Below, piece by piece: positions 13,957 through 61,016 of a DNA stretch of 64,000 bases (within the stretch, counting starts at the first letter, position 1; each line of letters opens with the position of its first letter). The stretch is from Octopus sinensis (lineage: Eukaryota). Under the pieces are notes generated by a model. That model was given only the letters and a program-made list of their open reading frames with translations, did no database searches and was not told the origin of the DNA. The position numbers and the translations under genes are program-made. The stretch lies in NCBI RefSeq assembly GCF_006345805.1, contig NC_043000.1, positions 89,652,001 to 89,716,000 on the forward strand, written 5' to 3'.

Positions 13957-13987
<31 letters not shown>

Positions 13988-14001
13988 TGTATGTATGTAT
14001 G

Positions 14002-14039
<38 letters not shown>

Positions 14040-14495: not shown

Positions 14496-14554
<59 letters not shown>

Positions 14555-14982: not shown

Positions 14983-15204
14983 GTAAATTATATACATAAG
15001 AATTGTTATCCTTCCAATTATTTCCTTTTCTTTCTTCTCTCGAGCTTGTTAGACTTTTTATTAACTTAAAATGATATTGACTACTAGACTATTCTAGTAC
15101 ACAGTGGAAACTTTTTTTAACGTTAAATAACAAACGCCATTCCTACCATTTCACTGATCTATGCACAACTAACAACACTGTACTCATATATTAAATGCTT
15201 TATA

Positions 15205-15251
<47 letters not shown>

Positions 15252-15349
15252 AAAGGTAATAATAGGCACAAAGCCTGGAATTTGGGGCATGGTGGGGGCT
15301 AATGAAGGCAATGCAACCGGTGAAAATGATGAAGGTAATTCAGCTGGTG

Positions 15350-16560
<1,211 letters not shown>

Positions 16561-31589: not shown

Positions 31590-32966
31590 TTTCTTTATTG
31601 GCCACACAGGGGGGACAAATACAAATGTAGAGCTTTTCTTTTCGAAAATGAAAAAGGGGAAAAAAAGAGAAAAAAGTAAAATTCCGATCACAAGGGATAG
31701 GTGGGGAAGGCGATCAAAAGGGATCGTGTATCACAGAATAAATACTTGAAAAGTAAGAAGCATTATTAGGTTTATCCGTGGAAAGAAAAGCCTACGGAAA
31801 AGTGCACGGTAATCTCAGGCAGGGAGGGAATAAACACATGAGAGCAAAGTGCTCTCTCTCTCTCTCTTTTTACGATTTACAGGATCATGCTCAAAGTGGT
31901 TTCGTCGCTCGCATGCACCATCTTTGCTACATTCACCCACCTTTTTTTTTTTAATTTCACGAGACAAAACCTGCCTCTCAATTCTCACCTTCCTTTTCAA
32001 ATGGTACTTAAAAAAGTTGATGAGCGATTGGCCAGATAGGTAAGTGTTTGTCTCTAATCCTTTCGCTCGAATCCACCACACACATTCTTTCACCACAGCC
32101 ACCAGTATGATGAAGACTGCCTTGCCTTCCCGGTTGAGGGAAGGTGGCGGAGTAATTGTCACGATAGACTCGCAGACAGGCGGACTCGTCCCACTCGTGA
32201 CAGCAGTCGTTCGGCATAAGCCCACAGGTCCGGAACTGTTGGACACTGCACGAGGGCGTGCAGAACGGTTTCGTCGCTCTGACCGCATCTCGGGCAAGTC
32301 GGTCCGGTGTATCTCGAACAGTGCTTGTAGAGCTTATCCCGAACAGGTAATGCTTCTGGATAGCACTTCCCGGCCAGGGATCTTTGGTGATTATCCATAG
32401 GTTCCGGGCGAAAGGTGTCCTGAGCAGGCTTGAGAGCAACGCGACACTCGCGGTGCCATTCGCCTAGCCTCGGTCTCTGTTTGATCCACGACTGTAGTTC
32501 GGCCAAGGAGACGAGCTGCGCGAAAGCGCGCCGCACAAACGGCGACCACACCTGTTCACCGTTGTCTCTAAAGCGCCGGAGATGTCTCAGTCTCGGCGCA
32601 TGTCTGCACATCATCAACCACGGCGTGCCTAGCCTCCATTTAGTGGGTATTGACAGAAAATGGATCGCCTAACCATCGGAACGCTTCCCTTCCACATGAA
32701 GCAGAAGAGTATGCGTTCCAGTTTGGTGATGGTAGGGTCGGAGCAAGGCACGACAGTCAGACGGTACTCGATGACGGATGCGATGTACGCGTTCGCCACC
32801 ACAGCACGACCTTTTAGGGATAGCTTCCTTTCGGCCCATTGCTGGGTGAGAGTGGCCACCCTAGTCGTTATTTCGCCCCAGTTCTTCTTCATTTGGAGGT
32901 CCGGTCCGAACCACACTCCGAACAATTTAACCGATCCGTCGGTCCAGCGTCCCACGATGGAGACGC
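31590..32966 (-). mobile_element. 5'-truncated Tx1/L1-clade LINE (ORF2 3' part and 3' UTR) inside a GATA/GACA microsatellite
   Basis: VKLFGVWFG..WAERKLSLKGRAVVAN..FMWKG..PLNGGLG, LPVRDKL..CPRCGQSDETVLHALVQCP (zinc knuckle), with frameshifts. Confidence 0.88.
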
Positions 32967-34945: not shown

Positions 34946-35685
34946 ACATATATATATACATATGCATATATCTATATGTGTGTGTGCATTCTCTCGAGAT
35001 AACTTCTGCAGTGAAGCTATTTTGTGCCCCAGTGTACACGAACATTTTAAATACGATTTTAAACGCCTATGTTTCATTCAACGTCACTTCGTGCACTTCT
35101 AATTAATTCCAGCTTTGCAAAGCTTTGTGGACATCAGTAAAGGGCTATTTGCTGTCTGATATGAGAACAATCTCTTCTTAGTTGCTATGAAAGGCTAGCT
35201 ACTCGGTAGCCGTAGCTGAAGATGCACAACGACAAAGAAATGCATGCGGTCAACGGTCTGATGGCATCATTCAGAGTTCAATGGTGTGTTTTTATGAATG
35301 ATGTTTGACTTTCAGTCTTCCGTGTTCGCCAAAATAAGGTACCAGTTAAATATTGGGGTCGATTTCATTAGATGTGCTCTTCTCCACAAGCAGTTGTTGC
35401 CTTCACTTTACTCATAAATCATTATTTCATTTGTTATGTTTCAGGCTGGTCATTTTTTGCTAAATAAACACGTACTATATACTCGTTCTTTACTTCAGCT
35501 TTATTATTATCATCCTTATTTTAGTATCCTATGTCAAAAATCTTTCGTCACAAATTCTGTGACCTCTTCAGTGTCGCCCCATCCCGCATGTCTCCTCCTC
35601 TCCTGAAGCTGAAGTGAATAATGTGTTTATAGTGCGTGTGTTTATTTGGAGAAACAAAAAAAAAAACAAAAAAAATGACCAAGTA

Positions 35686-36088
35686 GGCGTAGGAATGGCT
35701 CTGTGGTAAGTAGCTTGCTTACGAACCACATGTTCCGGGTTCAGTCCCACTGCGTGACACCTTGGGCAAGTGTCTTCTACTATAGCCGCGGGCCGACCCA
35801 AGCCCTGTGAGTGGATTTGGTGGACGGAAACTGAAAGAAGCCTGTCGTATATATGTATGTATGTGTGTGTTTGTGTGTCTGTGTCTGTGTTTGACCCCCC
35901 AACATCGCTTGACAACCGATGCTGGTGTATTCACGTCCCCGTAACTTAGCGGTTCGGCAAAAAGAGACCGATAGAATAAATACTAGGCTTCCAAAGAATA
36001 AGTCCTAGAGTCGATTTGCTCGACTAAAGGCGGTGCTCCAGCATGGCCACAGTCAAATGACTGAAACAAAAGAGTAAAAGAAAGAGTA
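35686..36088 (+). mobile_element. tRNA-derived SINE family A
   Basis: Full-length copy that aligns with 40034-40469. Confidence 0.9.
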
Positions 36089-36416: not shown

Positions 36417-36613
36417 ATGTAACAAATATTTCTCCATTCCTTCCAACTGTCAAAAGACATATGTCAACAACAGCTGTTGTCCACAAGTGCAGTGTTCATC
36501 GAATCCAGTTTGCAAGGATCTTGTAAGTGTATGCCAAAGTGCAGGAGCCCAGATCTGTCAAGGACAATTCAAAGACTTTGCCCTCATCAATTGTCGGAAG
36601 ACTTGTGGATACT
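36417..36613 (+). CDS. Exon 12, VWC-like repeat 5 C-half plus ShK domain 2 (five of six Cys), phase 2-1
   Basis: ttctttcag|...T|gtaagt, 197 nt. CNKYFSIPSNCQKTYVNNSCCPQVQCSSNPVCKDLVSVCQSAGAQICQGQFKDFALINCRKTCGY. Confidence 0.92.
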
Positions 36614-39361: not shown

Positions 39362-39397
39362 GTGGTGGTAGTGGTGATGGACCAATGACAACAGCAC
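39362..39397 (+). CDS. Exon 13, 36-nt micro-exon supplying the last Cys of ShK2 and a GS linker, phase 1-1
   Basis: tttccctttag|GTGGTGGTAGTGGTGATGGACCAATGACAACAGCAC|gtgagt. T+GT = Cys, then GGSGDGPMTTA. Confidence 0.8.
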
Positions 39398-39479
39398 GTG
39401 AGTAGTTTTTCTTTTCCTTCGGCAATATCATATATGTATCTGTGTATTCATGTGTGTACGTTTACATATATATATATAT

Positions 39480-39547
<68 letters not shown>

Positions 39548-39700
39548 CAGAGACAGAGAGAGACAGAGAGGAGTGAGAGAGTGTGTTAAGCATTTTCGGT
39601 ATGGAAATTAGAGACTCCTTCATAGAGTAACTGCTGCATTTGGTTAGTATATAAAGAGTCTGGTTGCTTGTTTCTCTGAAGATTGTCAAATGAGGTGGAC

Positions 39701-39743
39701 GCCTCTGATGAGAACCCAATAAGGTTCGAAAATTGATTAAGGT
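39701..39743 (+). ncRNA. Minimal type I hammerhead ribozyme motif
   Basis: GCCT-CTGATGA-GAACC(CAATAA)GGTTC-GAAA-A(TTGA)T-TA^AGGT. All core nucleotides are present, with a 5-bp stem II, a 4-bp stem I and a self-complementary stem III. Confidence 0.7.
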
Positions 39744-40033
39744 TGTTCGTAATTTTTTCAGTCTGCGGATAAATGACTAAAATTTTCCTTGGTTATAATT
39801 ACACCACATGTTAGGTATATATATATATATATATAAATATAAATATATACATGTATGTATGTATGTTTATATGTATATATATATGTATATATATATATAT
39901 GTATATTTATATATATGTATATATATATATTTATATATATATATAGATATGTATATATATATGTATAGATATATGTATAGATATATATATGTATATATAT
40001 ATATATATATATATGTATAGATATATATATATA

Positions 40034-40196
40034 GGCGCAGGAGTGGCTGTGTGGTAAGTAGCTTGTTTACCAACCACATGGTTCCGGGTCCAATCCCACT
40101 GCGTGGCACCTTGGGCAAGTGTTTTCTACTATAGCCTCGGGCCGACCAAAGCCTTGTGAGTGGATTTGGTAGACGGAAACTGAAAAGAAGCCCGTC

Positions 40197-40250
<54 letters not shown>

Positions 40251-40469
40251 CTGTGTGTCTGTGTTTGTCCCCCTAGCATTGCTTGACAACCGATGCTGGT
40301 GTGTTTATGTCCCAGTTACTTAGCGGTTCGGCAAAAGAGACCGATAGAATAAATACTGGGCTTACAAAAGAATAAGTCCCGGGGTTGAGTTGCTCGATTA
40401 AAGGCGGTGCTCCAGCATGGCCGCAGTCAAATGACTGAAACAAGTAAAAGAATAAAAGAGTAAAGAGTA
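40034..40469 (+). mobile_element. tRNA-derived SINE family A, well-preserved copy
   Basis: GGCGCAGGAGTGGCTGTGTGGTAAG..GGTTCCGGGTCCAATCCC head, central (TA)n(GT)n, and GTAAAAGAATAAAAGAGTA tail. Confidence 0.92.
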
Positions 40470-40483
40470 TGTATAGATATATG

Positions 40484-40529
<46 letters not shown>

Positions 40530-40587
40530 GTGTGTGTATTATATGTATATATATATATATGTGTATATATATATATGTATACATATG

Positions 40588-40623
<36 letters not shown>

Positions 40624-41069
40624 CATATATGTATATATATGTATATATGTATATATATATATGTATATATGTGTATATATGTATATATCTACGTATACAT
40701 TTATGTATCCATGTATGCATATATGTATGTATACATGTATATATATATGTCATCTTTGAAACGTTCCTGATTCTTCAGATTATCTCCCTTTCTCGTATGG
40801 TGCTGTTCTTTTTTGTCATTCGGTAATTATGACACATCCTCTAGAGGCGGAGATAATTTGAATATATCAGATTTTTGATATACCTGTATTTCTGTATTTG
40901 TATATGTTATTTCCTTTAGCTGATTGTTTTCATTTATACACACATACACAGGTAAGTGTGTAAGTATATATACACACACACGTTTGTGTGTGTGTGTGTG
41001 CGATACATATATTATTTTATTCGTTTTACCCATTTCAGCCCTAAGGCTGTGGCCATGCTAGTGCACCGC

Positions 41070-41875
41070 CACTCTAATCACCTTTTCAATGGACAATCTG
41101 ATGTGATTGGGTTTCGGTGAAGGGGAGAATTCGGCACTGCTGCTCTCTTTTGAGTCTCCTGTCTTGATATTGGTTCATCTGGGATCTTGGATAGCACGAG
41201 GTCAAGTTGTTTCTTGAAAACATCTACCTCAAATCCGTGAAGATCTCTCAGATGTTTTGGCAAGGCGTTAAATATCTGTGAGTCTTTGAATCCTAAGCTA
41301 ATGCAGTATGCGATCGTCATTCTAGATGGGATAACTGACACCTTTGGAACAGTGCAGTTCGAGCTCTGGTATAGCTTTCATTTCCATAGTTGGTGCCAGC
41401 CCCTCCAGGATTCTCCATCCATATATCACTGCATACCACTCCTATCTTCGCTCCAGGAAGTAGAGTCGTAGCTCTTTCAGTCCCAGTTCCGTCGATGTAA
41501 CATCGCTATTATTCCGCAATTATTCTGACATTTTAGGGTGTCCACAGTTGAGAGCAGTATTCCAGACGGCTGAGGACAAATGTTCTTGTTCGGAAGGTTC
41601 TCAGAATCCATTCGGCCATTCGCTTTGCAAACTGTCACCATTTTGGTGATGTACAGGTGAAACGAGGAATCGTGGCTCATATCAATCCCGATGTATGTGA
41701 TTCTGGGACTGCTTCTCCTTTTGGTCCAAAGTATCGTTGTTGCCGTTTCTGAGCACTAATTATCTGAATGCGGAAGGGCTTGGAATTCGTCTGTATTAAA
41801 TTGCATATTGTGTTCTTCAGGCTATTTATCTATGGCATCTAGATTCCTTGATTGCTTGTACTACTTTTGTGTTAT
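41070..41875 (-). mobile_element. Decayed CR1-group (L2/Crack/Daphne-like) LINE 3' part
   Basis: Remnants of ADDTK..HNMQFN, and SQIFNALPKHLRDLHGFEVDVFKKQLDLVLSKIPDEP. Confidence 0.7.
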
Positions 41876-41907
41876 CGGCATAGCTAGTATGTGTGTGTGT
41901 GTGTGTA

Positions 41908-41944
<37 letters not shown>

Positions 41945-41945
41945 A

Positions 41946-42038
<93 letters not shown>

Positions 42039-43698
42039 GATATTCCTTTTTTATATCAGAAACCTTGTAAGCGTACTTACAAGATGTAACATTGTATTCC
42101 ACGATTTGCGATATAACTAAAAGTGTCTGTGCAACAAAATAATGCAATATCAATAGCTGAAGAAAATATTTAGGAAAGAACTATGTCATATTACTTTACA
42201 GATTCTCGTGCTATTCTACAACTTACCAAGTTTATACTTACTTGTAATTTATTAATGTCTATAAAGATCCGTCTATCTATCAGTCTGTTCCTACCAATTA
42301 TCAATGGGATGGTGAATATTCTTATTACATGCTTTACTGATTCGAAATAATAAGCTAAATCAATACAGGTTACGTGTGATTCAATAGCCACATGGTAATA
42401 CTACATGAATTATTAAGTTACTTTGCTTGTATTTTTTTAAGACACAATTGCGCCAGGTACGTTGTGTATAAATAGCTTATCACTTTCTCTATTTAAATAT
42501 TAGCAGAGTCCATACATCACTATTTTCCTCATTCCATTGTTGACTTACATATGTAACACAATAATTACATCGCCTTGGATAATTTAAACTAGGCTGTTGC
42601 ATGCGTATATTCTTGAGTGTATGTATTTATGTATGTGTGGAGGCGCAATGGCCCAGTGGTTAGGGCAGCGGACTCGCGGTCGGAGGTTCGCGGTTTCGAT
42701 TCCCAAACCGGGCGCTGTGTGTGTTTATTGAGCGAAAACACCTAAAAAGCTCCACGCTGCTCCGGCATGGGGGGTGACCCTTGTTGTACTCTTTAGCCCC
42801 AACTTTCTCTCACTTTTTCTTCCTGTTTCTTGAGCAACGCTGCGATGGACTGGGGGGGGGGCACATACTCCACAGAAACCGGGAAACAGGGCCCATGAGC
42901 TTGAAAAGGGCGCATAAATAAATAAATGTATGTATTTATATATGTACGTATGTGTGTATGTATGTGTAGATAGATAGATACATAAATACATACATACATA
43001 CAAAGATGCATACAAACACACATACATACGTAGTACGTGCATATCTACATATAAACACTCATATGTACAGACGGACGGACGGACGGATGGACAGATGGAC
43101 GGATGGATGGATGGACGGTGGGACGGACGGACGGACGGACGGATGAATGGACGGACGGATGGACGTTGTTTTGTTATTATTATTATTTAAAAAGTCGGTG
43201 AGCTGGAAGAGAGTATATGGCGGAGTATACGTGTATCTGTATTGTTGTAGTGAATGTATAAGTATAGATGTACGCAGGTGTGGAAACTTTCCCTGACGAA
43301 CACAGAAGGTAAACAGAACCTAACAGACGGTAATTTTTAGCAATTCTGGGTGAAAAGGAGAGATAATTTCAAGAACTTAAAATAAATTCACGGTTGAATA
43401 AACATACTCAAGGATAAGGGACAATCTGATCTTCATCCATAGCTGTCACCCGCCTCCAAAACAAAGACTAGATTATCATTTCTGCTTCAGCAAGTTCGTT
43501 CGACCATGAAGTTATTCTTAAATTCTAGAAGTTATCTTCTCTTCAAATGCAGAGATGCTAATAGCTACAAGGTTGCGTTTAGCTCATCTAATTGCCAAGG
43601 AAATTTTCTTAAATTAAAAGTTATGTAACATTCTATAGACTCTCACTAGGAACCTGTTTGTTCCCCTCTTAGCTGGTTTTTAGATTTAATTATGCTTA

Positions 43699-44561
43699 GA
43701 TCAATAAGTATCCGGAGGATTGCCATAGTGACGAAGCTAAAGCATGCAGAGTGAAGCTGCTTGGCACAGATTCATCTTGAAATTTGTTGGGCATGCGCAT
43801 TAAGTTTTAACGTTCTAGCTCACTTCTGTTTACAGCAGTGCTTGGAAGGAATATGTGTAGCGTGTGATCGTCTCATTGACCATGACAGAGAAAGTTGAGC
43901 AGAGAGTCTGCATCAAATTTTGCCAAAAGATTGGCGATACCTGCTCAGAGGCCTGCGCAATTTTTTTTTTTTTTAAGTTTTCATCGTTCTTGACCGCAGT
44001 GCAACTGAAACCCGAGTGTATTTTTGGTCAGCTGAAAGCAGTTTTGGTACAAACTTGGCAGACACGCGTCTCATACCCAAATCTTCAGTGATAATGGACT
44101 GAACTGAACCGTAACTAATCTGCACATCCTCTGATAACTCATGGATGGTGATTCGACGATTTCCCCTCACAGCTGCACACACATCTGCGATGTCTTTCTC
44201 AGTTCTGCTTGTTGTAGATCTCCTCGAACGTTCGTCACTATCGACATTTTTTCGGCCATCTTGGGAACGTCTGAACCACTCGTACACTTGTGTGTGGCTC
44301 ATACGCTCCTCTCCATACATTTTCTGCAATTTTGCGTAGGCCTCTGGAAAAGTATCGCCATGAAAACTTTGTCTGCCAAGGTCAAATGCGAAGATCACAC
44401 GCTACGTACCTTCCTTCCAAACACTACTGTACACAGTGAAAGTGAGATAGAAGGTTAAAACCTAGTGCGCATGCACAGCAGAGTTTAAGCGGTTACACTC
44501 TGCATGCTTTTAACTTCGTTACTGTGGTAACAGTCCGGATACTTATTGACCAGACCTCGTG
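43699..44561. mobile_element. Two convergent 5' halves of one mariner family
   Basis: Plus copy 43699-43960 (MTEKVEQRVCIKFCQKIGD) and minus copy 43975-44561 (EAYAKLQKMYGEERMSHTQVYEW..MRRVSAKFVPKLLS). Each starts with the same TCAATAAGTATCCGGA end. Confidence 0.8.
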
Positions 44562-44596
44562 GGTAGATAGATAGACAGACAGACAGACAGACGAAC

Positions 44597-44672
<76 letters not shown>

Positions 44673-44781
44673 GCACAACCTTACATGTATATATTATGTA
44701 TACATACACACACACACATATATATGTATACTCACAAATACACACACGTGCGTACGCTCTCGCACACAAACACACACACAC

Positions 44782-44841
<60 letters not shown>

Positions 44842-45385
44842 TATATATATATATATATATATATACAATGCCGGTGGTTGTTGAGTTATTTATTGCTCGA
44901 CTATTGATCAATTGTCTCTTTAAAATGAAATAAAAATGGAAATCAGAAATCAATGTCTAGACAATTACGTATTTAACTTTACCATTATTCATAATATATG
45001 ATCACAGTTGCATAACCAATTACATATATATGCGTGTGAGCGATCAAATAAACATATATGCGCCTTTGCATTTATACACGCTTATGCACGCACATACATG
45101 TACACACATTCATCTTTTATCTTTTACATGTTTCAGTCAATGGACTGCGGCCATACTGGGGCACCGCCTTGAAGGGTTTTAAATCTAATAAACTGTTTCA
45201 AGTGTTTTCTTCCTAATCTGGTACTTATTCTATCGGTCTTTTTTGGCCGAAACACTAAATAACAGAGCCTAAACAAACCGACTTCGGTTCTGTAAAGCGG
45301 TAGTGGGGGCGGGGGATATAATGCAAACACAAAGACACGCACACATAGATATATACATGCATGTATACATACATACATACATACA

Positions 45386-45420
<35 letters not shown>

Positions 45421-45421
<1 letters not shown>

Positions 45422-45620
45422 TTTCTTTACTACCCACAAGGGGCTAAACACAGAGGGGACAAACAAGGACAGACAAACGGATTAAGTCGATTACATCGAT
45501 CCCAGTGCGTAACTGGTACTTAATTTATCGACTCCGAAAGGATGAAAGGCAGAACGTAACGGCAGACGAAATACGGCTACGCATTTCGCCCGGCGTGCTA
45601 ACGTTTCTGTCAGCTCGCCG
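45421..45620 (-). mobile_element. tRNA-derived SINE family B with extended 3' tail
   Basis: Reverse complement of the GGCG..GAGCTGGCAGAATCGTTAGCACGCCGGG family, also seen at 38599, 51077, 61316 and 18110. Confidence 0.8.
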
Positions 45621-45702
45621 CTGTATACATATATACATGCATACATACATATGTGTAGGTGTGTATGTATATGTATATGTATATGTATATATATACACAT
45701 AT

Positions 45703-45921
45703 GAGTGTAGGGGATGAAAAGTTCCTGGCTTTGGGTAAAACAAAATACAAGAGGATCAGTTAATTATAACTTTATCCAGCATATCTCCCTCTCAGATTCA
45801 CACACTTATTGCAGCGGTCCTTCACTTTTCCTAAGCAATGTAAAAGAACTCTGAAGGTTGGCCCTCCAACCAGGCTTTTTGTGACACCTAAAAGCCAAGA
45901 ACTTTACAGCGCCGCCTCGTA
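45703..45921 (-). mobile_element. Mariner-type MITE, sister of 25367-25591
   Basis: Aligns in reverse orientation to 25367-25591. Confidence 0.75.
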
Positions 45922-46065
45922 TATACCAGATGAACCAATAAAATTGTCCAAATTTTTGCTTCAACTTCGAAATTTTGTAACTCAGGAATTATTGAATGTA
46001 ACTTAATGGAATTATCAGTGGTTTTTCTAACAATTATGGAAAGTGTTAATTACTCTCCAAATTCA

Positions 46066-46548
46066 CCACTATCGGTGGTGTATTTTTCGTTTGTCACTGT
46101 TATTTATGACATCGTTCGTGCGTTTTTACTGGTTTTAAGGTTTTAGAGTTAGGGTTTTAGGGTTAGGGTTAGGGTTAGGGTGTTAGAGTTAGGATGTTAG
46201 GATTGGGTTTAGAGTTTTAGTGTTAGGGTTTTAGGGTTAGGGCGTTAGGGGTAGGGTTTTAGGGTTAGGGTTGTCATAAATAACAATGACAAACGAAATA
46301 TACATCGCTGGAAGTTCTTGTTGACAACAGCAGTAATTTTATTCAGCTGAATACACGTCATTGATTGGTTGAAATTACCGAAATACGAGAACTTTAACGT
46401 GAAATAACTTTGTAAATATAAGTTTTTCTCAAAGATGCTAAGAGTAAAAGATATTTTATATGACCCATTCTACCAGTGTGCGAAGGTTGAAAGTGTTTAG
46501 TTACAAAAAATTATTTTTTAAATCTGTAGGTCAAAAGGTAAAGATCTA
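46066..46548. mobile_element. Unclassified non-coding element carrying an internal TTAGGG array
   Basis: 33-bp inverted repeats (46079-46111 / 46272-46304, 31/33 match) enclose about 11 TTAGGG plus variants. The outer boundaries are inferred from where the TIGAR-like frame breaks. Confidence 0.5.
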
Positions 46549-46880
46549 ATTTCTTTGCTAGACACATCGTAAGCTGCAGTCGTTATCACTGGTTTTATAT
46601 TTACTGAGCAATCAGTCTGATCAGTTTTAGGCTGTTCATGCTCTTGTTTTGTACTATTGATTGCATCTATATAGCGGCGCTTAATTGGTGCAGGTACATA
46701 ATTGCCATCTTCTACCTGGCTGCTTTTACGTATTTGATCACACAAATCTTTGAAGAATGATTTTGCCCTTTCTTGCATCTGTTGTAGAGTTTCTGCGCCA
46801 GTTGGTGTATAATTGGCCACAGAAGTATTTATTTTTTAGCAGCAGTCACCAGTTCACGATAACCTTTTCCCTCAATGGTT
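46548..46880 (-). pseudogene. TIGAR-like (histidine phosphatase / PGAM family) gene fragment, frameshifted
   Basis: TIEGKGYRELVTAAKK(fs)TSVANYTPTGAETLQQMQERAKSFFKDLCDQI resembles recalled human TIGAR [43 protein letters not shown]. No RHG motif and no start codon. Confidence 0.7.
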
Positions 46881-47149
46881 ATCGTGAACTGGTGACTGCT
46901 GCTAAAAAAAAAAATAAATACTTCTGTGGCCAATTATACACCAACTGGCGCAGAAACTCTACAACAGATGCAAGAAAGGGCAAAATCATTCTTCAAAGAT
47001 TTGTGTGATCAAATACGTAAAAGCAGCCAGGTAGAAGATGGCAATTATGTACCTGCACCAATTAAGCGCCGCTATATATAGATGCAATCAATAGTACAAA
47101 ACAAGAGCTTTGTTGATTTCTAGAGGAACAAATTTACATTCTCTGCCAA

Positions 47150-47640
47150 GCCTCTCAGAAGTGAAAGCTTGCTGATAAGAGAATAATGGATCTCACTCAG
47201 CAGAGCCGCAGTGATGGTTGCTGGGGGTAGACAGAGAGAAAGATTCGAGGAGCTCCAGAACATTGTTTCTAACGGCCGCCTTCATTACCTTAGTGATAAT
47301 TACTAAGGAGAGAGAAATATGAAGCTAGTTGGCTGGGACATAAGGGGTTGCCTTTCATTGGAACGGAATATACTGAGGTGTGTTTCCAAATTTCAGGGTA
47401 TATCTCTGTAAAGAGTAAAAGATTAAAGATTTTTGCGAATATAGGAATAAGTTCAGGAGTGCAGTGTTTGAGTGTAATGGAAGTCAAGGTTAGTGGCCTT
47501 GTTTGAAACAGTTGGAAGTAGTTCCACTCTTGGCGTGTATGTTAGAGGAAGGGGGGAGTTATTGGGGTAAAAGGAGTAGGATATGGATGTGATCGAGGAA
47601 TGTTTAATATGAAAGAGAGTACTCAGTACTAAACGTAGAG
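47150..47640 (-). mobile_element. Decayed CR1/Jockey-group LINE, RT N-terminal fragment
   Basis: LKHCTPELIPIFAKIFNLLL..YPEIWK..VPMKGNP..PS matches the recalled LAKLFN..FP..WK..P.PKKG pattern. Confidence 0.7.
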
Positions 47641-48411
47641 TATTATATTTTATAGGGGACTGAAATTTCACGAATCGTTACCCAAAATTTCTCTCTTCCG
47701 ATTTTCGAAAGATTTTTTTTTAAATAAGAGAGATATTTTTAAAAACTAAATGTAAACTATTACATTTAGTTTACGGTCATAATAGACCGTATATCTAGAT
47801 TTAATAAAAAATTTGTCTAGTTATACAGATATAATTATATTTGTCTACCTAGATAAGTTTTTAGTAAATATTGACCGAATAGGCGTAGGCGTGGCTGTGT
47901 GGTAAGAAGCTTGCTTTCCAACCACATGGCACCTTGAGCAAGTGTCTTCTACTATAGCTTTGGCCCGACCAAAACCTTATGAGTAGATTTGGTAGACGGA
48001 AACTGAAGGAAGACCGTCGTAAATACATGTGTGTGTGTGTGTGTGTTTGTTTGTTCCTTCGTTCCGTAACTTAGCGGTTCGGCAAAAATCCCGATAGGAT
48101 AAGTTCTAGGCTTACAAAGAATAAGTCCTGGGGTCGATTTCTTCGATTAAAGGCGGTGCTCCAGCATTACCGCAGTCCATTAACTGAAACAAGTAAAAGA
48201 ATAAAAGAAAAAAAGAAAAGAATATAACATTGTAAGCAAAATAAGTAGTCTGATGTGTATGAATATTTGCTAACTTGACAAAAGAAATAAAGAAAAGACG
48301 AAATAGAAAAAGATTAACAAAACAGGCAAAATGAGCTGTAAATGAATGTACAGACAAACTGACAGACGGACGGACAGACAGACAGACGGACAGACAGACA
48401 GACAGACAGAA

Positions 48412-48454
<43 letters not shown>

Positions 48455-48463
48455 TAGATAGAC

Positions 48464-48542
<79 letters not shown>

Positions 48543-51288
48543 AGATAGATAGATAGATAACAAACTAGGTGTAACTTTTCTTGAGATTTTATCTTCCAAT
48601 ATGATTTGATAAACGCATTTATTTTCCTGATTGAATAGTCTCTTTTCTTCATCTTCACACTTAAATGCTTGCATACATCTATCATCACCATTTCCGATGA
48701 ACACTGCATGCAGTAGTATACATCTAAGCTGAATACATGACACTGTCTATTATATTTTTCCGTCAAATAAATCTCCATGACATATCAACTACATTACCTG
48801 GCTTCTATTCTCGACAGATTAGAAAACATCAGAAGAATGAAATGGTGCTTTTGTATTTTTCGACAAAGGGACACTTGGGAATTGTACAGACAAAACCTTT
48901 GGAGTTAAATCAATAGATATAAAACAGCAAATAAGTTGAGCTGTTACAAACATATCTTTGTAATTTGATAAATAAAAAAAGTATTTAAGGAAGTCTACAA
49001 CAACATTAAAAACTTTTATATAAGAATTGAAAATGTTTACATTATTCTAGGCTAAATTTCCATTTCTAATCGAGTAAGAACAAAAACGTTTATAGCACTG
49101 ACAAAACCACATACGATAAACTATAATTTAGTAACATAATATTCCCAAAATTCTGGTGCCAACAGCACACTGTTAAACTAGAAGTTAACTATATAACTAT
49201 GACCCATAACATAAACAACAGAACAGAATATTTAACCCTAAGAACATCATAAATTATTCTTAAAAATCACAAATGTAAGTTAAAACTTTAAATATAAAGT
49301 AGTCAACGCCCTCACAATCATATGTAAGATTAATAAGCAACTATATACTAGATTCAAATATATTTAAAGTAAGGAAATCTTATACCCCATAAACCCTTTT
49401 CTGTATGAAAAATTGTATGCCAGTAATAGATGGCTTAGCAATAAACAATTAGTGACAAACAATACTGTAATCTGCCCGCTTCTAAATGTTCATCGGAAAA
49501 GGTAGTGATAGGCGTATGCAAGTGTTTAAGTGTGAAGATGTAAAAAAGAGTATTCAATCATGAAAGTAGATGCGTATATCAAATCATATTACATGATAGA
49601 ACCTCAAGAATAGTTACACTGGGTGTGTCATTTATCTATTTATTTATCTATCTATTATTCATTTTTATCCCTTTCTAACTAAACACCTGTTTCTAAAAAC
49701 TTTAGCCTTCACCAACACCGTTGTGCTAATCAGTGAATCTCTTATTAATATATTTGTGGATTCAAAACTATTTTGTGCCTTCGCTTAAAAGGAAACAGAC
49801 GAATTAATACTGAATTCCATTATGAGAGTATACGATTCAGCGGAATTATTCACAACCATCAGAATTTTATTTTAGAACGTTTGAGGAAATACTCAGGTTT
49901 GTGAGAAGGTTTTTATAGACCATGGACACTTGGTCATGCGCAGTATGTATGGACAAGAATTACATAGAGTCAGAAAATATATAATATAAATATTTAGCAA
50001 AAATGTTGACAATTATTTTACTATAGTAAATTCTGGGTAATAAAATATTGCCTATATCTTGCTTAGATATATCACTTTCATAATTTGGCACGTTAAACTT
50101 AGATGAAATTAAATTCTTTAAAGTCAATAAAAAGTTATTTTTATTAATAACACTTCCTTTCAACGTCCTCAAATTGTACGAAAACAAACTCCTTATTGTT
50201 AATAGAAGTAATTTTTCATTATTCTCTGTTAAAGCCATGTTTTATTAATTCTACCATGCAAATACTTCAGTATAGAGAAGAGAGTATACCATACTGACAG
50301 TAGAAGACCAAAATACTTTTATAAGTTGGATCTTTTAACAACATGATTCTGGGTCTTTCATCTTCGATTCGCAAACAAAATCTGAACGCAATGAAACAAA
50401 GAAACCGTTAAGAAGATTATTTAGAAAACGAAATCAAGAAGAAGCGTTTGAAGGATGCATATGTAAAAATAATATTAAATGAATAATATTTGATTGGGTA
50501 TACTTAAAAAGAAAGTTTTAGGTAAATATGAACAATACCGACTAAATGCCAAATGCAATAATTTAATCAATAAACAATACTAATAAATACATAAAACTAA
50601 TGCTATCTTTCATTAACATGGTTGAATTGTATCTCAGTTCAATCACAAAACGTCATTCATATTCAAATACTACAAAAAAAAAAGAGAAAGGGACAGTTTG
50701 AGTCAATGAAAAAATGAGTTAATGAAACACAAAGAGAGGGAAAACTATTGATTTTCAGAAAATGTTCTAAAGTTGTTTCGTTCATTGAGCCATGTGTGAT
50801 AATAACTAGCAGTTAGGAAAGAGACATAGGAAAAAATTGGTTAACGAAAAATAAAATGAAATTGAAGATGAAAATGTCGGAAAATTCTTGTTGTGAATTC
50901 AAATTTGCCAGTTTGTTGTTTACTGGAAATTCCTCATTAAGCGGTGATACAATGGCAGTGTTTACATGAATTCACCAAAAGATTGTTATCGAATATTATA
51001 TTTTGCTGATGGATTTTAATCGCAACCCCTAAAACTTTGAACGTAATTTAAAAGATATATTTTAAAAGCCTAATAAGGCGGCGAGTTGGCAGAATCGTTA
51101 GTACGCCGAGTAAAATGCTTAGTAGCATTTCGTCCGTCTTTATGTTCTGAGTTCAATTTCCGCCTTACGTTCTTCAGGATCTAGGATCTATGTAATCGAC
51201 TTACCCTCTACTTCAAAATTTCTGGCCTTGTGCCAAAATTTGAAACCAATATATATAATATATATTATATATATATATATATATATAA

Positions 51289-51930
<642 letters not shown>

Positions 51931-51980
51931 ATGTATGTGTGTGTGTGTGTTTATATATATATATTTGTGTGTGTGTGTGG

Positions 51981-52011
<31 letters not shown>

Positions 52012-52272
52012 TGTGTGTGTGTGTGTGTGGTCTGTGTTTGTCTCTCCAATATATATATATATAAATATTTATACATTCTTTATTGGAATAGTGGATCTTC
52101 AGACTCACTGCTTTAAATAACATTATTTAAACATATTGGGTTGAAAATTCCTTTGGGATAGAAAAAGTTGAAGATTGCCCGAGCTCCGAGATCCACTATT
52201 CCAAAATAGCATTTCATCGTGTTCTCTCGAGAGTTTATAAAGTTCTTATGACTATATATTGTATATATATAT

Positions 52273-52309
<37 letters not shown>

Positions 52310-52341
52310 CCATTTCCAATATATATATATATTATATATAC

Positions 52342-52435
<94 letters not shown>

Positions 52436-52493
52436 ATTTCCAAGTATATATATTATATATACATATATATTATATATACATATACATATATAT

Positions 52494-52535
<42 letters not shown>

Positions 52536-53121
52536 ATTAGGGAGTATGGCTCCAAACTTACAGAGAAAAATTAGATTAGGATTAAATCAAATTTCACAGA
52601 ATAAATATATAACATATAAATTAGAGATAAAACCACTATTGGGCAACTCAAACAGCGATAGACATAAACCAATACATAAATAACAAATAATATAAATATA
52701 ATTAATATAATATATAATATATATATGTAAAATTTAAAATTTTAATTTTTAAATTTTTTTATTTATTTTTTTTATTATCTTTAACCTGAATATTGACTAT
52801 AATTTTAGTTAGAATTTATTTCAATTGAATTTAAACTAAATTTTAATTCGAATTTAATTATAGCCATGAAACGTACGTAGTGTTTTCATTTATTATATTA
52901 TACTTATCATTCTTTTTATACTTTTTGGTTATTAAAAAAATGAATACATAAAAAATAGAAAATAAAAAATTAAATTAAATTAAAACATTTAAAAAATTAA
53001 ATTTTATATATATATATTATATATTATATTAATTATATTTATATTATTTGTTATTTATGTATTGGTTTATGTCTATCACTATTTGAGTTGCCTAATAGTG
53101 GTTTTATCTCTAATTCATATT

Positions 53122-53157
<36 letters not shown>

Positions 53158-53726
53158 TATATAAAATGAGATAGGGGTTGAAAATTCAACCCACCATGGG
53201 ATAATATATATCCAGTATACTGCTAGATAGGTACCCAACAAGACTAATACATAGATGTTAAAAATTGCCAAACAATCAGTTCATCTATTGTATTATATGG
53301 GTAAAGGTAATAATATTACCGTAAATTAATACTACAAAATTAGTGAATGGAGAAACATACTTAAATCAATAAAACATCAACTATCAGATGATACCCAATC
53401 AATACTTTAATACACCATTACACATCAGCAAAGGCATTATACAAAATATACAGTAAGAGTAAATAGACAAAGAGATATAAGTATAAAATTTCAAATATAA
53501 TATGTAATTAAATCAAATCTGACAGCTGTTTCGGCAGTGAGGGCAGTCATACCTCATTTAACCTATAAGCCATAAAGGCAGGTATAATGCCTTTGCTGAT
53601 ATGTAATGGTGTATTAAAGTATTGATTGGGTATCATCTGATAGTTGATGTTTTATTGATTTAAGTATGTTTCTCCATTCTCTAATTTTGTATTATATATA
53701 TATATATACTTGGAAATATATATATA

Positions 53727-54258
<532 letters not shown>

Positions 54259-54299
54259 ATATATATATATTATGTGAAGCAATATGAAAGCTGGGTCGT

Positions 54300-55040
54300 T
54301 TTCCTAATTCAAACTTCGTTGAAATAATCCCAGGTCTACATCTACATATAAAAAACTAAGGCTAATAATACATCATTATCTAAATTTGTACAATCTGTCA
54401 TTGATAGTAACACTGAATGTAAAATTGTTTGATCCATCGTATTTAATACACATCCATATAAACGTGGTGGTGGTGCTTAGTGCGGACTGTGTATCTGGTA
54501 TGTTCCATATTACTTGTCTACAATCAACGTAATAAATTAATCATAAGATACAAATATCTTAAGAACAAATCTTTGCTATATGCTAACTATACCCAACCTT
54601 AAAATAACTTACCAGACCGACACCAATAAGCTTTATGTACTTGATTAATGCGATTGACTACTTTCCTATCCAAAAAAAGACCATAAGTCGATTTCCTTTT
54701 TGTAATAGATAATGTAATTGACCATATTCTTAAATTGTATGCCCTAATTACTCGTTTTAAGTTTTACTAAAGTTGTTACTATTTAATTACCGCCTTTGTT
54801 CTGTAATTTTCTTAAAATTTACTCCTGGTTGCTTTATTCTTAGATATATTTATTATTGATGATTTATACTAATTAATTTTCATTATATACAAGGGAAAAG
54901 GTTTATAGTGTCTCAGAGGATAAGCAATACCTGATGATGGCTACTAAGCCGAAACTTCAGAGTCACTGTCAACCTTTTCCGTGTAAAACTTTATAAATAT
55001 GGACTCTACTAAAAAGATAATGTGTAACCTTTCAGTTTGA
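54300..55040 (+). mobile_element. Decayed Penelope-like element 3' end with pLTR
   Basis: CKIV*SIVFNTHPYKRGGGA*CGLC resembles the W..I..PY..G..C.LC tail of the Penelope GIY-YIG region. It is followed by a hammerhead-type core CTGATGA..GAAAC..GTC at 54931-54964. Confidence 0.55.
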
Positions 55041-55097
55041 TGTTAAAATATTTTTACATATATCCTCATATAAACTATTTATGTATGTGTATGTATG

Positions 55098-55133
<36 letters not shown>

Positions 55134-55144
55134 ATATATATATA

Positions 55145-55365
55145 CATCCGATCGTGGCCGTTTGCCAGCCTCGTCTGGCACCTGTGCCGGTGGCACGTAA
55201 AAAGCACCCACTACACTCATGGAGTGGTTGGCGTTAGGAAGGGCATCCAGCCGTAGAAACATTGCCAGATCAGACTGGGCCTGGTGCAGCCTTCTGGCTT
55301 CCCAGACCCCAGTTGCACCGTCCAACCCATGCCAGCATGGAAAGCGGACGCTAAACGATGATGAT
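55145..55365 (+). mobile_element. RTE-associated SINE/LINE 3' tail ending in (GAT)n
   Basis: GAGTGGTTGGCGTTAGGAAGGGCATCCAGCCGTAGAAA..CCAGCATGGAAAGCGGACGCTAAACGATGATGAT, a recalled RTE-type 3' end. Confidence 0.55.
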
Positions 55366-55369
55366 ATAT

Positions 55370-55410
<41 letters not shown>

Positions 55411-55613
55411 TATTTATGTATATATGGTTATATATATATGTATGTGTGCCTGTATATATGTGTGTGTGTGTGTTTGTATGTATATGTGTGTGCGTTAGTG
55501 TGAATGTATGTAGCGAGGAAGAGTAAGTGACGCATTGAGCGCATTGCATGTATTTTATATACTAATGTTAATTTTTCTTTTTCTTTTTTCGTCTCTTCTC
55601 GGTTCTATATTAG

Positions 55614-55733
55614 TCCCCGCTAACTGCGTAGATATAGATCCGAAATGTGCCGATTATACAGGATTTGATGTATGCAGCACTGTCTTGTTCAAATTTGCAG
55701 TGGTCAACTGTCGAAGATTCTGTCGGTATTGTG
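55614..55733 (+). CDS. Exon 14, ShK domain 3, phase 1-1
   Basis: Long polypyrimidine tract..atattag|...|gtaagt, 120 nt. LPANCVDIDPKCADYTGFDVCSTVLFKFAVVNCRRFCRYC. Confidence 0.92.
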
Positions 55734-59851: not shown

Positions 59852-61016
59852 GAGTGAGAGAGCAGTGCATACTCTCAAAGTGACACTGGGGTAAAATATA
59901 CAAAGTCCAGTATATCCATCATGACTACCCGTCTGTTAAGGGTACACCAGGCACATGCATCACAACCATATGTGCGCGACATGGTGATCTCATATCAAGA
60001 TAAACAGCACATGACCTTCCAGGTGGGACCCAGTTAGAATTTTCTTTTGGTCGAGTAACCCATCCCGTTGAAAAGGTTGTGAATAAGGGTTGTTTAAGGA
60101 TGTTGGACGAAACATCCATATTTCCACAGATGAATTATTCAAAACCCAAAGAATCCCGCTCAACACATGGCTATGATGCTCCGCCACGACTTCTGCTTGT
60201 GATCAGAGATGCACATATCGTCAGCCACTACGGGACATGCTTAACTGGTTACGGTCAAACAACTGACAAGCAAATCTGTGGTATTGAGCAAAATATTTGC
60301 TATAGTCCATCTTTAATACCAAGACAAAACAATGTACTGGGAAAGTTCGTGCCGATTTTTAAAGGAAAGAAAAAGGTCAATAAATACTTGCCATTACATT
60401 TTTAATCAACCAAATATGAACCATTTTGTTGCACAATGCGTCTCCATCTTTCCTTTAACTTGAAAATGCCCTTTTCCCATAATTGGGATGGTTTCATAGC
60501 AAAGAATTCATCAAGGTATCTTTTTACATCATCCATGGAATTGAATTTTTTACGATTAGCACTATAATGCAGAGACCTGAATAAGAGGAAATCCGAAGAA
60601 GCAATATCTGGTGAATATGGAAGGTGGGGTAACACATACCAGCCGAGCTGCAGCAATTTTTGTCTGGTTCCCAAAGCATCAAGTGCCGTAAATGAACTTA
60701 TCTTCCATTTAAAGGATTACAGAATTAGCACATATAGGAACATAAATCTTCTTCCACGAAAATATAGCTTAAACTATGCTCTAAATGGAGGTGTAGTCAA
60801 ATCCTATTTCATGCACTCAACCATGTTCTAAAATAAGTCGAAAGATAAGCTACTATAAATCGGCACGAACTTTCCGGACAACCCAATGCATGAAAAACTT
60901 CCATTCAGTTAAGACTAGAAGCCACGAGAGCCACTGCCAGGTACTGCATCAGGGCATAGCCACTGCCTGATACTGCATCAGGGCATTAACACTGCCTGGT
61001 ACCGCATCAGGGCATT
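59852..61016 (-). mobile_element. ~540-bp (ATT)n-associated element, copy A, carrying a mariner insertion and a triplicated 30-bp end
   Basis: Aligns with copies B and C outside 60337-60886. CCACTGCCTGGTACTGCATCAGGGCAT-like unit three times at 60930-61016. Strand inferred. Confidence 0.85.
60337..60886 (-). mobile_element. Internally deleted mariner transposon
   Basis: TRQKLLQLGWYVLPHLPYSPDIASSDFLLFRSL..WEKGIFKLKERWRRIVQQNGSY*. TIRs GGAAAGTTCGTGCCGATTT / AAATCGGCACGAACTTTCC, at the host TA site (AATG-TA-CATG in copy B). Confidence 0.9.

What the first reader, a model, noticed from the sequence alone, without database searches (positions are those of the whole stretch)
46640..47108. 225-bp fold-back palindrome made from a host enzyme gene fragment (TIGAR-like)
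Seen: arms 46640-46864 and 46877-47108 are exact reverse complements except for an A-run (6 vs 11) and one TA unit, around a 12-nt loop TTTTCCCTCAAT. On the minus strand the loop is in-frame coding sequence (T-I-E-G-K-G), bounded by a native AACC/GGTT 4-bp inverted repeat, which fits microhomology-primed fold-back synthesis. Inference: because it lies in an intron of the ShK/VWC gene, transcription would yield ~225 bp of near-perfect dsRNA homologous to TIGAR mRNA. That is a potential hairpin endo-siRNA source or ADAR substrate acting in trans on a metabolic gene.
Basis: partly seen in the sequence, partly recalled or inferred. Interest (0 to 1): 0.7.

Follow-up and report, generated by a model that had tools for sequence, protein, structure and literature searches.

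The report
Fold-back copy of a TIGAR exon
About 230 bases of an octopus TIGAR-like exon have been copied backwards right next to themselves, forming a near-perfect hairpin inside another gene's intron; this looks like a break-repair scar (less likely an assembly error), not a demonstrated regulatory RNA.

Summary
The palindrome is real in the window. Arms 46640-46864 and 46877-47108 have no substitutions and differ only by A6/A11 and (TA)3/(TA)4, around a 12-nt loop. The window comes from an octopod, syntenic with Octopus bimaculoides at 87-91% nt identity. The left arm and loop, read on the minus strand, are TIGAR-like coding sequence. The best solved-structure match is 3dcy; identity to a Sepia esculenta transcript is 75% aa, and by codon position 0.85/0.88/0.48.

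The left arm looks instead like an exon with its own flanks. Homology and frame run 35 nt past the arm to a GTAAAT donor. Eleven nt beyond the right arm sits a strong acceptor followed by AAA, where relatives place a phase-0 intron before K-F-G. The right arm is therefore an inverted copy inserted about 9 nt inside the exon's 5' end. This fits snap-back priming on a 3-4-nt microhomology with slippage-prone copying.

No other TIGAR exon lies in the 64 kb. The locus sits in a 16.2-kb intron of a plus-strand VWC/ShK gene, so that claim holds.

Trans-acting siRNA is disfavoured, because a published survey found no endo-siRNA pathway in molluscs. ADAR hyper-editing is plausible but untested. An assembly artefact cannot be excluded without reads.

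The parts
46640..46864 (-). Left arm, the template arm: TIGAR-like coding sequence read on the minus strand (...GYRELVTAAKK/INTSVANYTPTGAETLQQMQERAKSFFKDLCDQIRKSSQVEDGNYVPAPIKRRYIDAINSTKQE)
   Evidence: Homology to the Sepia transcript and to 3dcy. The frame is broken only at the A-run.
46865..46876 (-). 12-nt loop. On the minus strand it reads ATT GAG GGA AAA (I-E-G-K), native coding sequence contiguous with the left arm. It holds the conserved E-G of the ER-x-[FY]-G-x-x-E-G motif.
46877..47108 (+). Right arm, the inverted copy of the left arm. It carries both length expansions (A11, (TA)4), and TIGAR homology stops at its outer end.
46861..46880 (.). Hinge: AACC (46861-46864) and GGTT (46877-46880), a 3-4-nt inverted microhomology separated by the 12-nt loop. 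GGT is the native Thr codon ACC on the minus strand. Whether the fourth base is native cannot be tested.
   Evidence: The mechanism follows the model in PMC11724301.
46832..46837 (.). T6 (A6 on the coding strand) in the template arm. The copy has A11 at 46904-46914. An open frame needs A7 (matching the length of Sepia AAKKSNTSV) or A10.
46668..46673 (.). (TA)3 in the template arm, in frame (R-R-Y-I-D-A). The copy has (TA)4 at 47073-47080, which gives +2 and a stop.
46605..46639 (-). Continuation of the exon beyond the palindrome (HEQPKTDQTDCS), ending at a GTAAAT donor (GT at 46604-46603, phase 0). Only the left arm has this continuation.
   Evidence: The donor was read by eye; splicing was not tested.
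47109..47133 (-). Right flank, minus strand: tttgttcctctag|AAATCAACAAA. This is a polypyrimidine tract plus AG (47121-47120), followed by AAA. It is proposed as the native acceptor and first codon (Lys) of the exon.
   Evidence: such acceptor-like sites occur about 1 per 941 nt per strand, and with AAA following about 1 per 32,000 nt; relatives end the preceding exon at RLRER|GTGAGT or GTAAGA, phase 0.
39398..55613 (+). The 16.2-kb intron of the plus-strand VWC/ShK gene that contains the palindrome. Its flanking exons are 39362-39397 and 55614-55733; the preceding exon is 36417-36613.

Best explanation
This is a very young fold-back (snap-back) inverted duplication at the 5' end of a TIGAR-like exon. 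The exon lies on the minus strand, antisense inside a 16.2-kb intron of a VWC/ShK gene in an octopod genome.

Proposed sequence of events (inferred). A break or stalled 3' end arose on the plus strand just after ...CAATGGT(T), about 9 nt inside the exon. That end folded back and paired with (A)ACC 12 nt upstream on the same strand. It was extended for about 228 nt using the exon as template. The new strand was then joined to the other side of the break, close to the exon's own acceptor. Copying was slippage-prone: both length differences are expansions in the copy (A6 to A11, (TA)3 to (TA)4).

Consequences (inferred). This exon copy is disabled. The K-F-G codons are not recognisable, 232 nt of antisense sequence are inserted, and there is also a -1 frameshift. 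Any transcript through it, whether host pre-mRNA or a TIGAR transcript, carries a roughly 225-bp near-perfect hairpin. In a coleoid cephalopod the hairpin's likeliest fate is ADAR hyper-editing and turnover with the intron, not dicing into trans-acting siRNAs.
For: Shown:
- The palindrome's anatomy and its zero substitutions.
- TIGAR identity of the arm.
- The left arm is the parent. Homology and frame continue past its outer end to a GTAAAT donor, whereas the right arm's outer flank is unrelated.
- Codon-position identity to Sepia of 0.85/0.88/0.48, with 30 synonymous and 20 non-synonymous codon differences. The sequence was therefore under purifying selection until recently.
- Two relatives' genomic contigs end the preceding exon at RLRER followed by GTGAGT or GTAAGA. 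The next exon should therefore start K-F-G-x-[VLI]-E-G-K, three codons upstream of the hinge.
- An acceptor-like site followed by AAA lies 11 nt outside the right arm on the coding strand. Such sites with AAA occur about once per 32 kb per strand in this window.
- The flanks are unique in the window and the arms are not a repeat family.
- The host intron is defined by in-frame splicing that matches an O. bimaculoides protein.

From the literature:
- In yeast, fold-back inversions of 2 to about 150 bp arise when one break end primes on a short inverted microhomology and the other end captures the product (PMC11724301).
- Read-level fold-back artefacts mirror the read about its midpoint (PMC12870357). 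Here a 232-nt arm is followed by at least 17 kb of unique sequence.
Against: - No reads or second assembly could be examined, so the structure rests on one assembly.
- The 11 nt between the acceptor and the arm (AAATCAACAAA) do not encode the universally conserved K-F-G. A pure insertion would imply K-S-T-K-T-I-E-G-K. The model therefore needs a small deletion plus about 7 nt of filler, and no template for that filler was found within +/-3 kb.
- A 5-nt difference in one homopolymer is large for a very young duplication.
- No other TIGAR exon was found in the 64 kb, in 33.7 kb of syntenic O. bimaculoides sequence, or in 74 kb of the cuttlefish VWC locus. If the exon is in situ, its introns exceed 17 kb and about 56 kb.
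- No O. bimaculoides TIGAR protein surfaced in the searches.
Confidence: 0.5

Rival explanations
1. It is an assembly or sequencing artefact. The right arm does not exist in the animal's genome. A fold-back or chimeric long read, or a mis-join, introduced the inverted copy, and the A-run and TA-run differences are unpolished long-read errors.
For: The arms differ only at a homopolymer and a dinucleotide run, the classic long-read error sites. The template arm itself has A6 where an open frame needs A7 or A10, which could be a base-calling error. About 0.55-0.6% of ONT gDNA reads show fold-back artefacts, and some recur at the same sites (PMC12870357).
Against: Read-level fold-backs mirror the read to its end. 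Here the mirror stops after 232 nt at a clean junction and is followed by at least 17 kb of unique, N-free sequence, so two exact chimeric junctions would be required. The hinge uses a 3-4-nt microhomology and a 12-nt native loop with no adapter. Host-gene exons elsewhere in the window are intact and in frame, so the assembly is not grossly unpolished.
Confidence: 0.25
2. It is a real fold-back, but on a displaced gene fragment. A piece of the TIGAR locus was copied into the VWC/ShK intron. The functional TIGAR gene lies elsewhere, so the hairpin is homologous to an intact target mRNA.
For: Only one TIGAR exon is present in 64 kb, and none in the syntenic or cuttlefish loci examined. The fragment is nearly undecayed, as expected for a recent copy of a live gene.
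Against: The piece carries exon-flanking signals on both sides, an acceptor plus AAA and a donor, at the positions expected from relatives. It is therefore at least a DNA-level copy larger than the exon. No insertion boundaries, target-site duplication or poly-A tail are visible. Single-exon DNA transpositions are rarer than long introns in octopus genomes (the last point is my own knowledge).
Confidence: 0.2
3. It is a functional hairpin-RNA (hpRNA-type) locus. The host pre-mRNA hairpin is diced into 21-23-nt siRNAs that repress TIGAR in trans.
For: The architecture matches Drosophila hpRNAs, which are inverted duplications of a protein-coding gene segment with a short loop (PMC10317233 and PMC10292708, listed). 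The hairpin is very stable, and its intronic location gives a route to transcription.
Against: A small-RNA survey of molluscs, with O. bimaculoides among the sampled animals, found no dedicated siRNA Dicer/Ago and Dicer-pair signatures at least fivefold below those of siRNA-bearing species. It suggests editing rather than dicing as the fate of dsRNA (PMC12479628). With zero substitutions the structure is too young to show any selection. No intact target gene was found, and there is no Rfam match.
Confidence: 0.05
4. It is a foldback transposon or MITE whose terminal inverted repeats happen to resemble TIGAR.
For: Other hairpin-type inverted repeats lie in the same intron (52614-53120 and 53322-53702).
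Against: The arms are coding sequence with a purifying-selection signature, and the coding frame runs through the loop and beyond one arm. There are no other copies in the window and no target-site duplication.
Confidence: 0.02

Closest known systems
Fold-back (snap-back) inverted insertions at DNA breaks: SD-MMEJ, the Pol-delta/NHEJ hybrid mechanism and MMBIR-type template switching (PMC11724301; PMC5728401)
   Same: An inverted copy sits directly next to its template. The hinge is formed by a few bases of inverted microhomology with a short spacer. The second junction has little or no homology. Length errors sit at simple repeats, consistent with error-prone repair synthesis.
   Different: The copy is 228-232 nt, longer than most experimentally recovered events (mostly under 14 bp, up to about 150 bp in yeast). 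This is a germline event in an octopod seen only as an end product. No empty allele is available, so the break position and any filler or deletion at the second junction are inferred.
Drosophila hpRNA loci and mouse-oocyte inverted-repeat pseudogenes that yield endo-siRNAs (PMC10317233; PMC10292708; the mouse case is from my own knowledge)
   Same: An inverted duplication of a protein-coding gene segment that would fold into a long, near-perfect hairpin when transcribed.
   Different: No small-RNA or target evidence exists here. The host clade appears to lack a dedicated siRNA pathway (PMC12479628). The hairpin seems to sit on the parental exon itself rather than at a separate locus. With zero divergence there has been no time for selection.
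Intronic inverted repeats as ADAR hyper-editing substrates (for example inverted repeat pairs; PMC9989829)
   Same: A long intramolecular dsRNA formed by nearby inverted copies within a pre-mRNA. Octopus is among the species with abundant clustered editing.
   Different: The arms are a unique coding exon, not a repeat family, and editing at this locus has not been examined.
Fold-back artefacts in long reads (PMC12870357)
   Same: The two halves map to the same place on opposite strands, and the differences sit at homopolymers.
   Different: The mirror is short (232 nt) and asymmetric, embedded in unique sequence on both sides, with a native 12-nt loop and a microhomology hinge.
TIGAR / histidine phosphatase superfamily branch 1 (PF00300; PDB 3dcy, 3e9c)
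   Same: The arm encodes the segment that aligns to residues 100-153 of the 3dcy chain. This includes the E-G of the ER-x-[FY]-G-x-x-E-G motif and the TP(P/T)G(G/A)ETL...FF..LC stretch.
   Different: Only about 92 residues, one exon, are present. There is no RHG motif and no C-terminal SHG region in the window. The frame is broken at the A-run and the conserved F-G is missing.

Membership tests
TIGAR-like histidine phosphatase (gene or exon) | Sequence is closest to TIGAR among solved structures and relatives | tested here: met
   The fragment's best PDB hit is 3dcy (E 1.3e-4), followed by 3e9e/3e9c. The Sepia relative hits 3dcy at 1e-31. The PF00300 match of the fragment alone is weak (E 0.051, below the curated cutoff).
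TIGAR-like histidine phosphatase (gene or exon) | Complete catalytic domain: N-terminal RHGE motif and C-terminal His (SHG) region | tested here: not met
   tblastn with Sepia, human and three invertebrate TIGAR-like proteins finds nothing else in the window or in L004.
TIGAR-like histidine phosphatase (gene or exon) | Open reading frame across the exon | tested here: not met
   The template arm has A6, giving a TAA stop; an open frame needs A7 or A10. This could be a base-call error.
Fold-back DSB-repair / template-switch inverted duplication | Inverted copy contiguous with its template, with one arm identifiable as the parent | tested here: met
   Homology and frame continue beyond the left arm only.
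Fold-back DSB-repair / template-switch inverted duplication | Short inverted microhomology at the hinge with a small spacer | tested here: met
   (A)ACC at 46861-46864 and GGT(T) at 46877-46880, separated by a 12-nt native coding loop. Whether the fourth base is native is unknown.
Fold-back DSB-repair / template-switch inverted duplication | The second junction returns to the sequence on the other side of the break | tested here: inconclusive
   An acceptor followed by AAA lies 11 nt from the junction, as expected for the exon start. The intervening CAACAAA does not encode F-G, and no template for it was found.
Fold-back DSB-repair / template-switch inverted duplication | An allele or orthologue without the copy (empty site) | not testable with these tools
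   The O. bimaculoides locus retrieved (L004) covers only window positions 1-15730. P0014 is not on record as an encoded gene.
hpRNA / endo-siRNA hairpin locus | Long, near-perfect inverted repeat with a short loop, derived from a protein-coding gene | tested here: met
hpRNA / endo-siRNA hairpin locus | The hairpin is transcribed | not testable with these tools
   Transcription is only inferred from the intronic position in the VWC/ShK gene. No RNA data could be examined.
hpRNA / endo-siRNA hairpin locus | Dicer-type 20-24-nt duplex small RNAs and repression of the parental gene | not testable with these tools
   No small-RNA data were available here. The published mollusc survey argues against such a pathway (PMC12479628).
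Long-read fold-back artefact | The mirror image extends to the end of the read or contig (symmetric about the breakpoint) | tested here: not met
   The mirror ends after 232 nt. Unique sequence follows on both sides and there is no N (criterion from PMC12870357).
Long-read fold-back artefact | No support from independent reads | not testable with these tools
   No read data were available.
Foldback transposon / MITE | Multiple copies and target-site duplication | tested here: not met
   It is single-copy in the window, the flanks differ at 46639/47109, and there is no duplicated flank.

The most novel reading that the evidence does not exclude
The palindrome is a real, newborn gene-derived hairpin locus in a coleoid cephalopod. 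It would be transcribed within the VWC/ShK pre-mRNA. Its dsRNA would either be heavily A-to-I edited, with effects on host splicing or innate dsRNA sensing, or be processed into small RNAs that act on a TIGAR mRNA. That would capture the birth of an hpRNA-type regulator in a clade thought to lack endo-siRNAs.
Probability: 0.06. Interest if true: 0.6.

Novelty: new member of a known kind. Interest (0 to 1): 0.3.

Why it matters
If real, this is an unusually clean natural example of a long (about 230 nt) snap-back repair product in an animal germline. The template, hinge microhomology, native loop and slippage errors are all still readable because nothing has mutated since. It also marks a disabling lesion, together with a frameshift, in a TIGAR-like exon of an octopod. 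Since no TIGAR protein surfaced for O. bimaculoides in the searches, this raises the question of whether TIGAR is intact in octopuses. As a regulatory RNA it is only a possibility. In cephalopods the most testable consequence is ADAR hyper-editing of a unique-sequence hairpin of known age. If it is an artefact, it flags a local assembly error inside a gene.

Tried and rejected
- Other TIGAR exons. I searched the window, 33.7 kb of syntenic O. bimaculoides sequence and a 74-kb cuttlefish VWC locus with Sepia, human and three invertebrate probes. None were found.
- TIGAR protein from the same or a close species. Two word-indexed searches and one full HMMER scan returned only the Sepia esculenta contig and relatives at 53% identity or less. 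There is no independent copy of this locus and no O. bimaculoides TIGAR.
- The orthologous O. bimaculoides intron as an empty-site test. P0016 gave only window positions 1-15730. P0014 is not on record as an encoded gene, and its cluster members have no contigs.
- Template for the 7-11 nt between the copy and the acceptor. No match of 8 nt or more explains it within 44-50 kb of the window.
- Rfam. No family matched in the window.
- Transposon origin. Rejected: the flanks are unique, there are no further copies and no target-site duplication.
- Retrocopy origin. Disfavoured, because splice signals flank the exon on both sides.
- Literature on octopus TIGAR. No papers were found.
- Pfam on retroelement-like ORFs noticed by eye. 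No hits.

Full report
**1. Observation**

- Arm 46640-46864 aligns to the reverse complement of arm 46877-47108 with no substitutions and two length differences: T6/A11 and (TA)3/(TA)4.
- The loop is TTTTCCCTCAAT, and complementarity ends abruptly at 46639/47109.
- As RNA the 509-nt region folds at -418 kcal/mol against -120 +/- 6.5 for shuffles, z = -46.
- No other inverted repeat in the window is both long and perfect. The window has no N.

**2. Source organism**

- The only close protein relative of the arm is a 140-aa ORF on a Logan contig from run SRR23936173. Two papers identify that run as Sepia esculenta larval RNA-seq.
- The cysteine-rich exons elsewhere in the window match O. bimaculoides proteins.
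- Window positions 1-15730 are collinear with O. bimaculoides chromosome CM046604.1 at 87-91% nucleotide identity, non-coding DNA included.
- The window is therefore from an octopod related to, but not identical with, O. bimaculoides.

**3. What the arms encode**

- Read on the minus strand, the loop and left arm give T-I-E-G-K-G-Y-R-E-L-V-T-A-A-K-K, then the A-run, then I-N-T-S-V-A-N-Y-T-P-T-G-A-E-T-L-Q-Q-M-Q-E-R-A-K-S-F-F-K-D-L-C-D-Q-I-R-K....
- The best solved-structure matches are 3dcy, aligned to residues 100-153 of that chain, and 3e9c/3e9e. I know these entries as human and zebrafish TIGAR.
- The full Sepia N-terminus hits 3dcy at 1e-31.
- Identity to Sepia is 61/81 residues. By codon position it is 0.85/0.88/0.48, with 30 synonymous and 20 non-synonymous codon differences.
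- This is the signature of a sequence that evolved under purifying selection until very recently. "TIGAR-like" is confirmed.

**4. Which arm is the original**

- TIGAR homology and the open frame continue past the outer end of the left arm (..K-Q-E-H-E-Q-P-K-T-D-Q-T-D-C-S) as far as TCA|GTAAAT at 46605/46604. Sequence beyond the right arm is unrelated to TIGAR.
- The loop is native coding sequence contiguous with the left arm.
- The left arm plus loop is therefore the template, and the right arm is the copy.
- Both length differences are expansions in the copy. The (TA)3 of the template is in frame. Its A6 is one short of the A7 that would keep the frame and match the length of Sepia AAKKSNTSV.

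**5.

- Two relatives' genomic contigs (P0009 on L002, and P0007) run ...D-K-R-L-R-E-R and then straight into GTGAGT or GTAAGA. This indicates a phase-0 intron after RLRER.
- All full-length invertebrate relatives continue K-F-G-x-[LV]-E-G-K.
- The exon that contains the palindrome should therefore begin only three codons upstream of the ACC at 46879-46877. The hinge lies about 9 nt inside the exon.
- On the coding strand, 11 nt outside the right arm, the sequence reads tttgttcctctag|AAAT.
- Acceptor-like sites of this quality occur about once per 941 nt per strand in the window. With AAA following they occur about once per 32 kb.
- I therefore read the right flank as the exon's own upstream intron. 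The event is local: an inverted copy inserted at the 5' end of an exon that still has its own acceptor and donor.
- Weak point: the 11 nt AAATCAACAAA do not encode K-F-G. A small deletion plus filler must be assumed, or a divergent or degenerate exon start. No nearby template for the filler exists.

**6. Rest of the TIGAR gene**

- No other TIGAR exon was detectable in the 64 kb, in the 33.7-kb O. bimaculoides locus L004, or in a 74-kb cuttlefish VWC locus. Probes were Sepia, human and three invertebrate proteins that include the RHGET and VSHG regions.
- Either the gene has very long introns, over 17 kb upstream and about 56 kb downstream, and interleaves with the VWC/ShK genes, or this is a displaced piece.
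- No O. bimaculoides TIGAR protein appeared in any search, although O. bimaculoides proteins are in the database.

**7. Host gene**

- Plus-strand exons 36417-36613 (VWC C-terminal half plus ShK), 39362-39397 (Gly-rich mini-exon) and 55614-55733 (ShK) have canonical splice sites.
- They join in frame to give ...CRKTCGYCGGSGDGPMTTALPANCVDIDPKC... This matches O. bimaculoides XP_014779000.1...CRKTCGYCGGGGPVSTTLPADCLDIDPRC....
- Pfam confirms ShK, and VWC just below its cutoff.

**8. Mechanism**

- The geometry matches the fold-back model established in yeast. There, a resected 3' end pairs with a short inverted microhomology a few to tens of nt upstream and is extended. The product is then captured by the other break end with 0-5 nt of homology. 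Products range from 2 to about 150 bp (PMC11724301; related SD-MMEJ work is listed).
- Here the primer is GGT(T), the pairing site is (A)ACC, the spacer is 12 nt, and about 228 nt were copied.
- Expansion at exactly the two simple repeats fits slippage during repair synthesis. This is an inference; that break-induced synthesis is frameshift-prone is from my own knowledge.
- A replication-fork template switch would leave the same scar, and the two cannot be told apart here.

**9. Artefact?**

- Long-read fold-back artefacts are real: about 0.6% of ONT gDNA reads, some recurrent. By definition they mirror the read about its midpoint (PMC12870357).
- In this case the mirror is 232 nt long, has two exact junctions, and is followed by unique sequence for many kb. 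That is not what a single fold-back read produces.
- Differences confined to a homopolymer and a dinucleotide run, plus an A6 in the template arm that breaks the frame, are what unpolished long-read consensus looks like.
- Without reads I put the artefact at about one in four.

**10. Function**

- Transcription of the host gene would place a roughly 225-bp hairpin in its pre-mRNA.
- The siRNA reading is disfavoured. A 2025 small-RNA survey of molluscs, with O. bimaculoides among the sampled animals, found no dedicated siRNA machinery and no Dicer signature from long dsRNA. It proposes editing as the fate of such dsRNA (PMC12479628).
- Clustered hyper-editing of long intramolecular dsRNA is the main source of A-to-I sites across metazoans, and octopus was among the species profiled (PMC9989829).
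- The likeliest consequence is therefore passive ADAR hyper-editing and intron turnover.
- With zero divergence between the arms, no selection for any function can have acted yet.
- For the TIGAR-like exon itself the insertion is disabling.

**11. Verdict**

Origin, hinge and intron location hold. "Captured fragment" is probably wrong, and trans-acting small RNA is unlikely.
- The structure is a new example of a known kind of mutation. Its interest is modest unless reads confirm it and RNA data show editing or small RNAs.

Noticed in passing
window 46068-46315: An interstitial telomere-like array (TTAGGG and GTTTTAGGG variants, 46116-46270) is bracketed by a 44-nt inverted repeat (46068-46111 / 46272-46315, 84-94% complementary). 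It lies only about 330 nt from the TIGAR palindrome and is single-copy in the window. It could be a healed break or a hairpin element with a telomeric core.
   Followed up: partly
window 52614-53120 and 53322-53702: Two further hairpin-type inverted repeats lie in the same host intron: 160-nt arms at 88% with a 187-nt spacer, and 121-nt arms at 95% with a 139-nt spacer. They are non-coding, AT-rich, older and MITE-like. They are also potential dsRNA sources.
   Followed up: partly
window 29077-29495, 35670-36083, 40031-40459, 45113-45421, 47866-48216 and others; L004 5738-7035: A SINE-like repeat family of about 350-430 nt has at least 8 copies in the window and copies in O. bimaculoides. Two copies in opposite orientation bracket the unique 2.4-kb block that holds the palindrome.
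   Followed up: partly
window 1578-1733, 6776-36613, 39362-39397, 55614-55733 (+): A modular VWC/ShK gene array is orthologous to O. bimaculoides XP_052823621.1 and XP_014779000.1. The three ShK exons each end with a donor right at or after the last Cys codon (phase 1).
   Followed up: yes
window 3778-4074 (+), 43973-44398 (-), 60402-60674 (-): Mariner/Mos1-like transposase remnants. The HTH_48 domain is confirmed by Pfam for the 43973-44398 ORF only.
   Followed up: partly
window 32159-32955 (-), 51597-51911 (-), 62892-63458 (-): ORFs that look by eye like retroelement (reverse-transcriptase C-terminal) remnants. The three tested (32629-32955, 51597-51911 and 62892-63458) gave no Pfam match; the overlapping 32159-32617 ORF was not tested.
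   Followed up: partly
L001 about 455-465 (Sepia esculenta Logan contig): The cuttlefish TIGAR transcript contig has a 2-nt gap relative to the window (TTCTTC--AGATTTG), which shifts its frame. The cause could be assembly error, a splice variant or a real difference. Its downstream part encodes a long low-complexity insert.
   Followed up: no
protein searches: No Octopus bimaculoides TIGAR protein surfaced, although O. bimaculoides proteomes are in the database. TIGAR may be unannotated, very long, or degenerate in octopods.
   Followed up: partly
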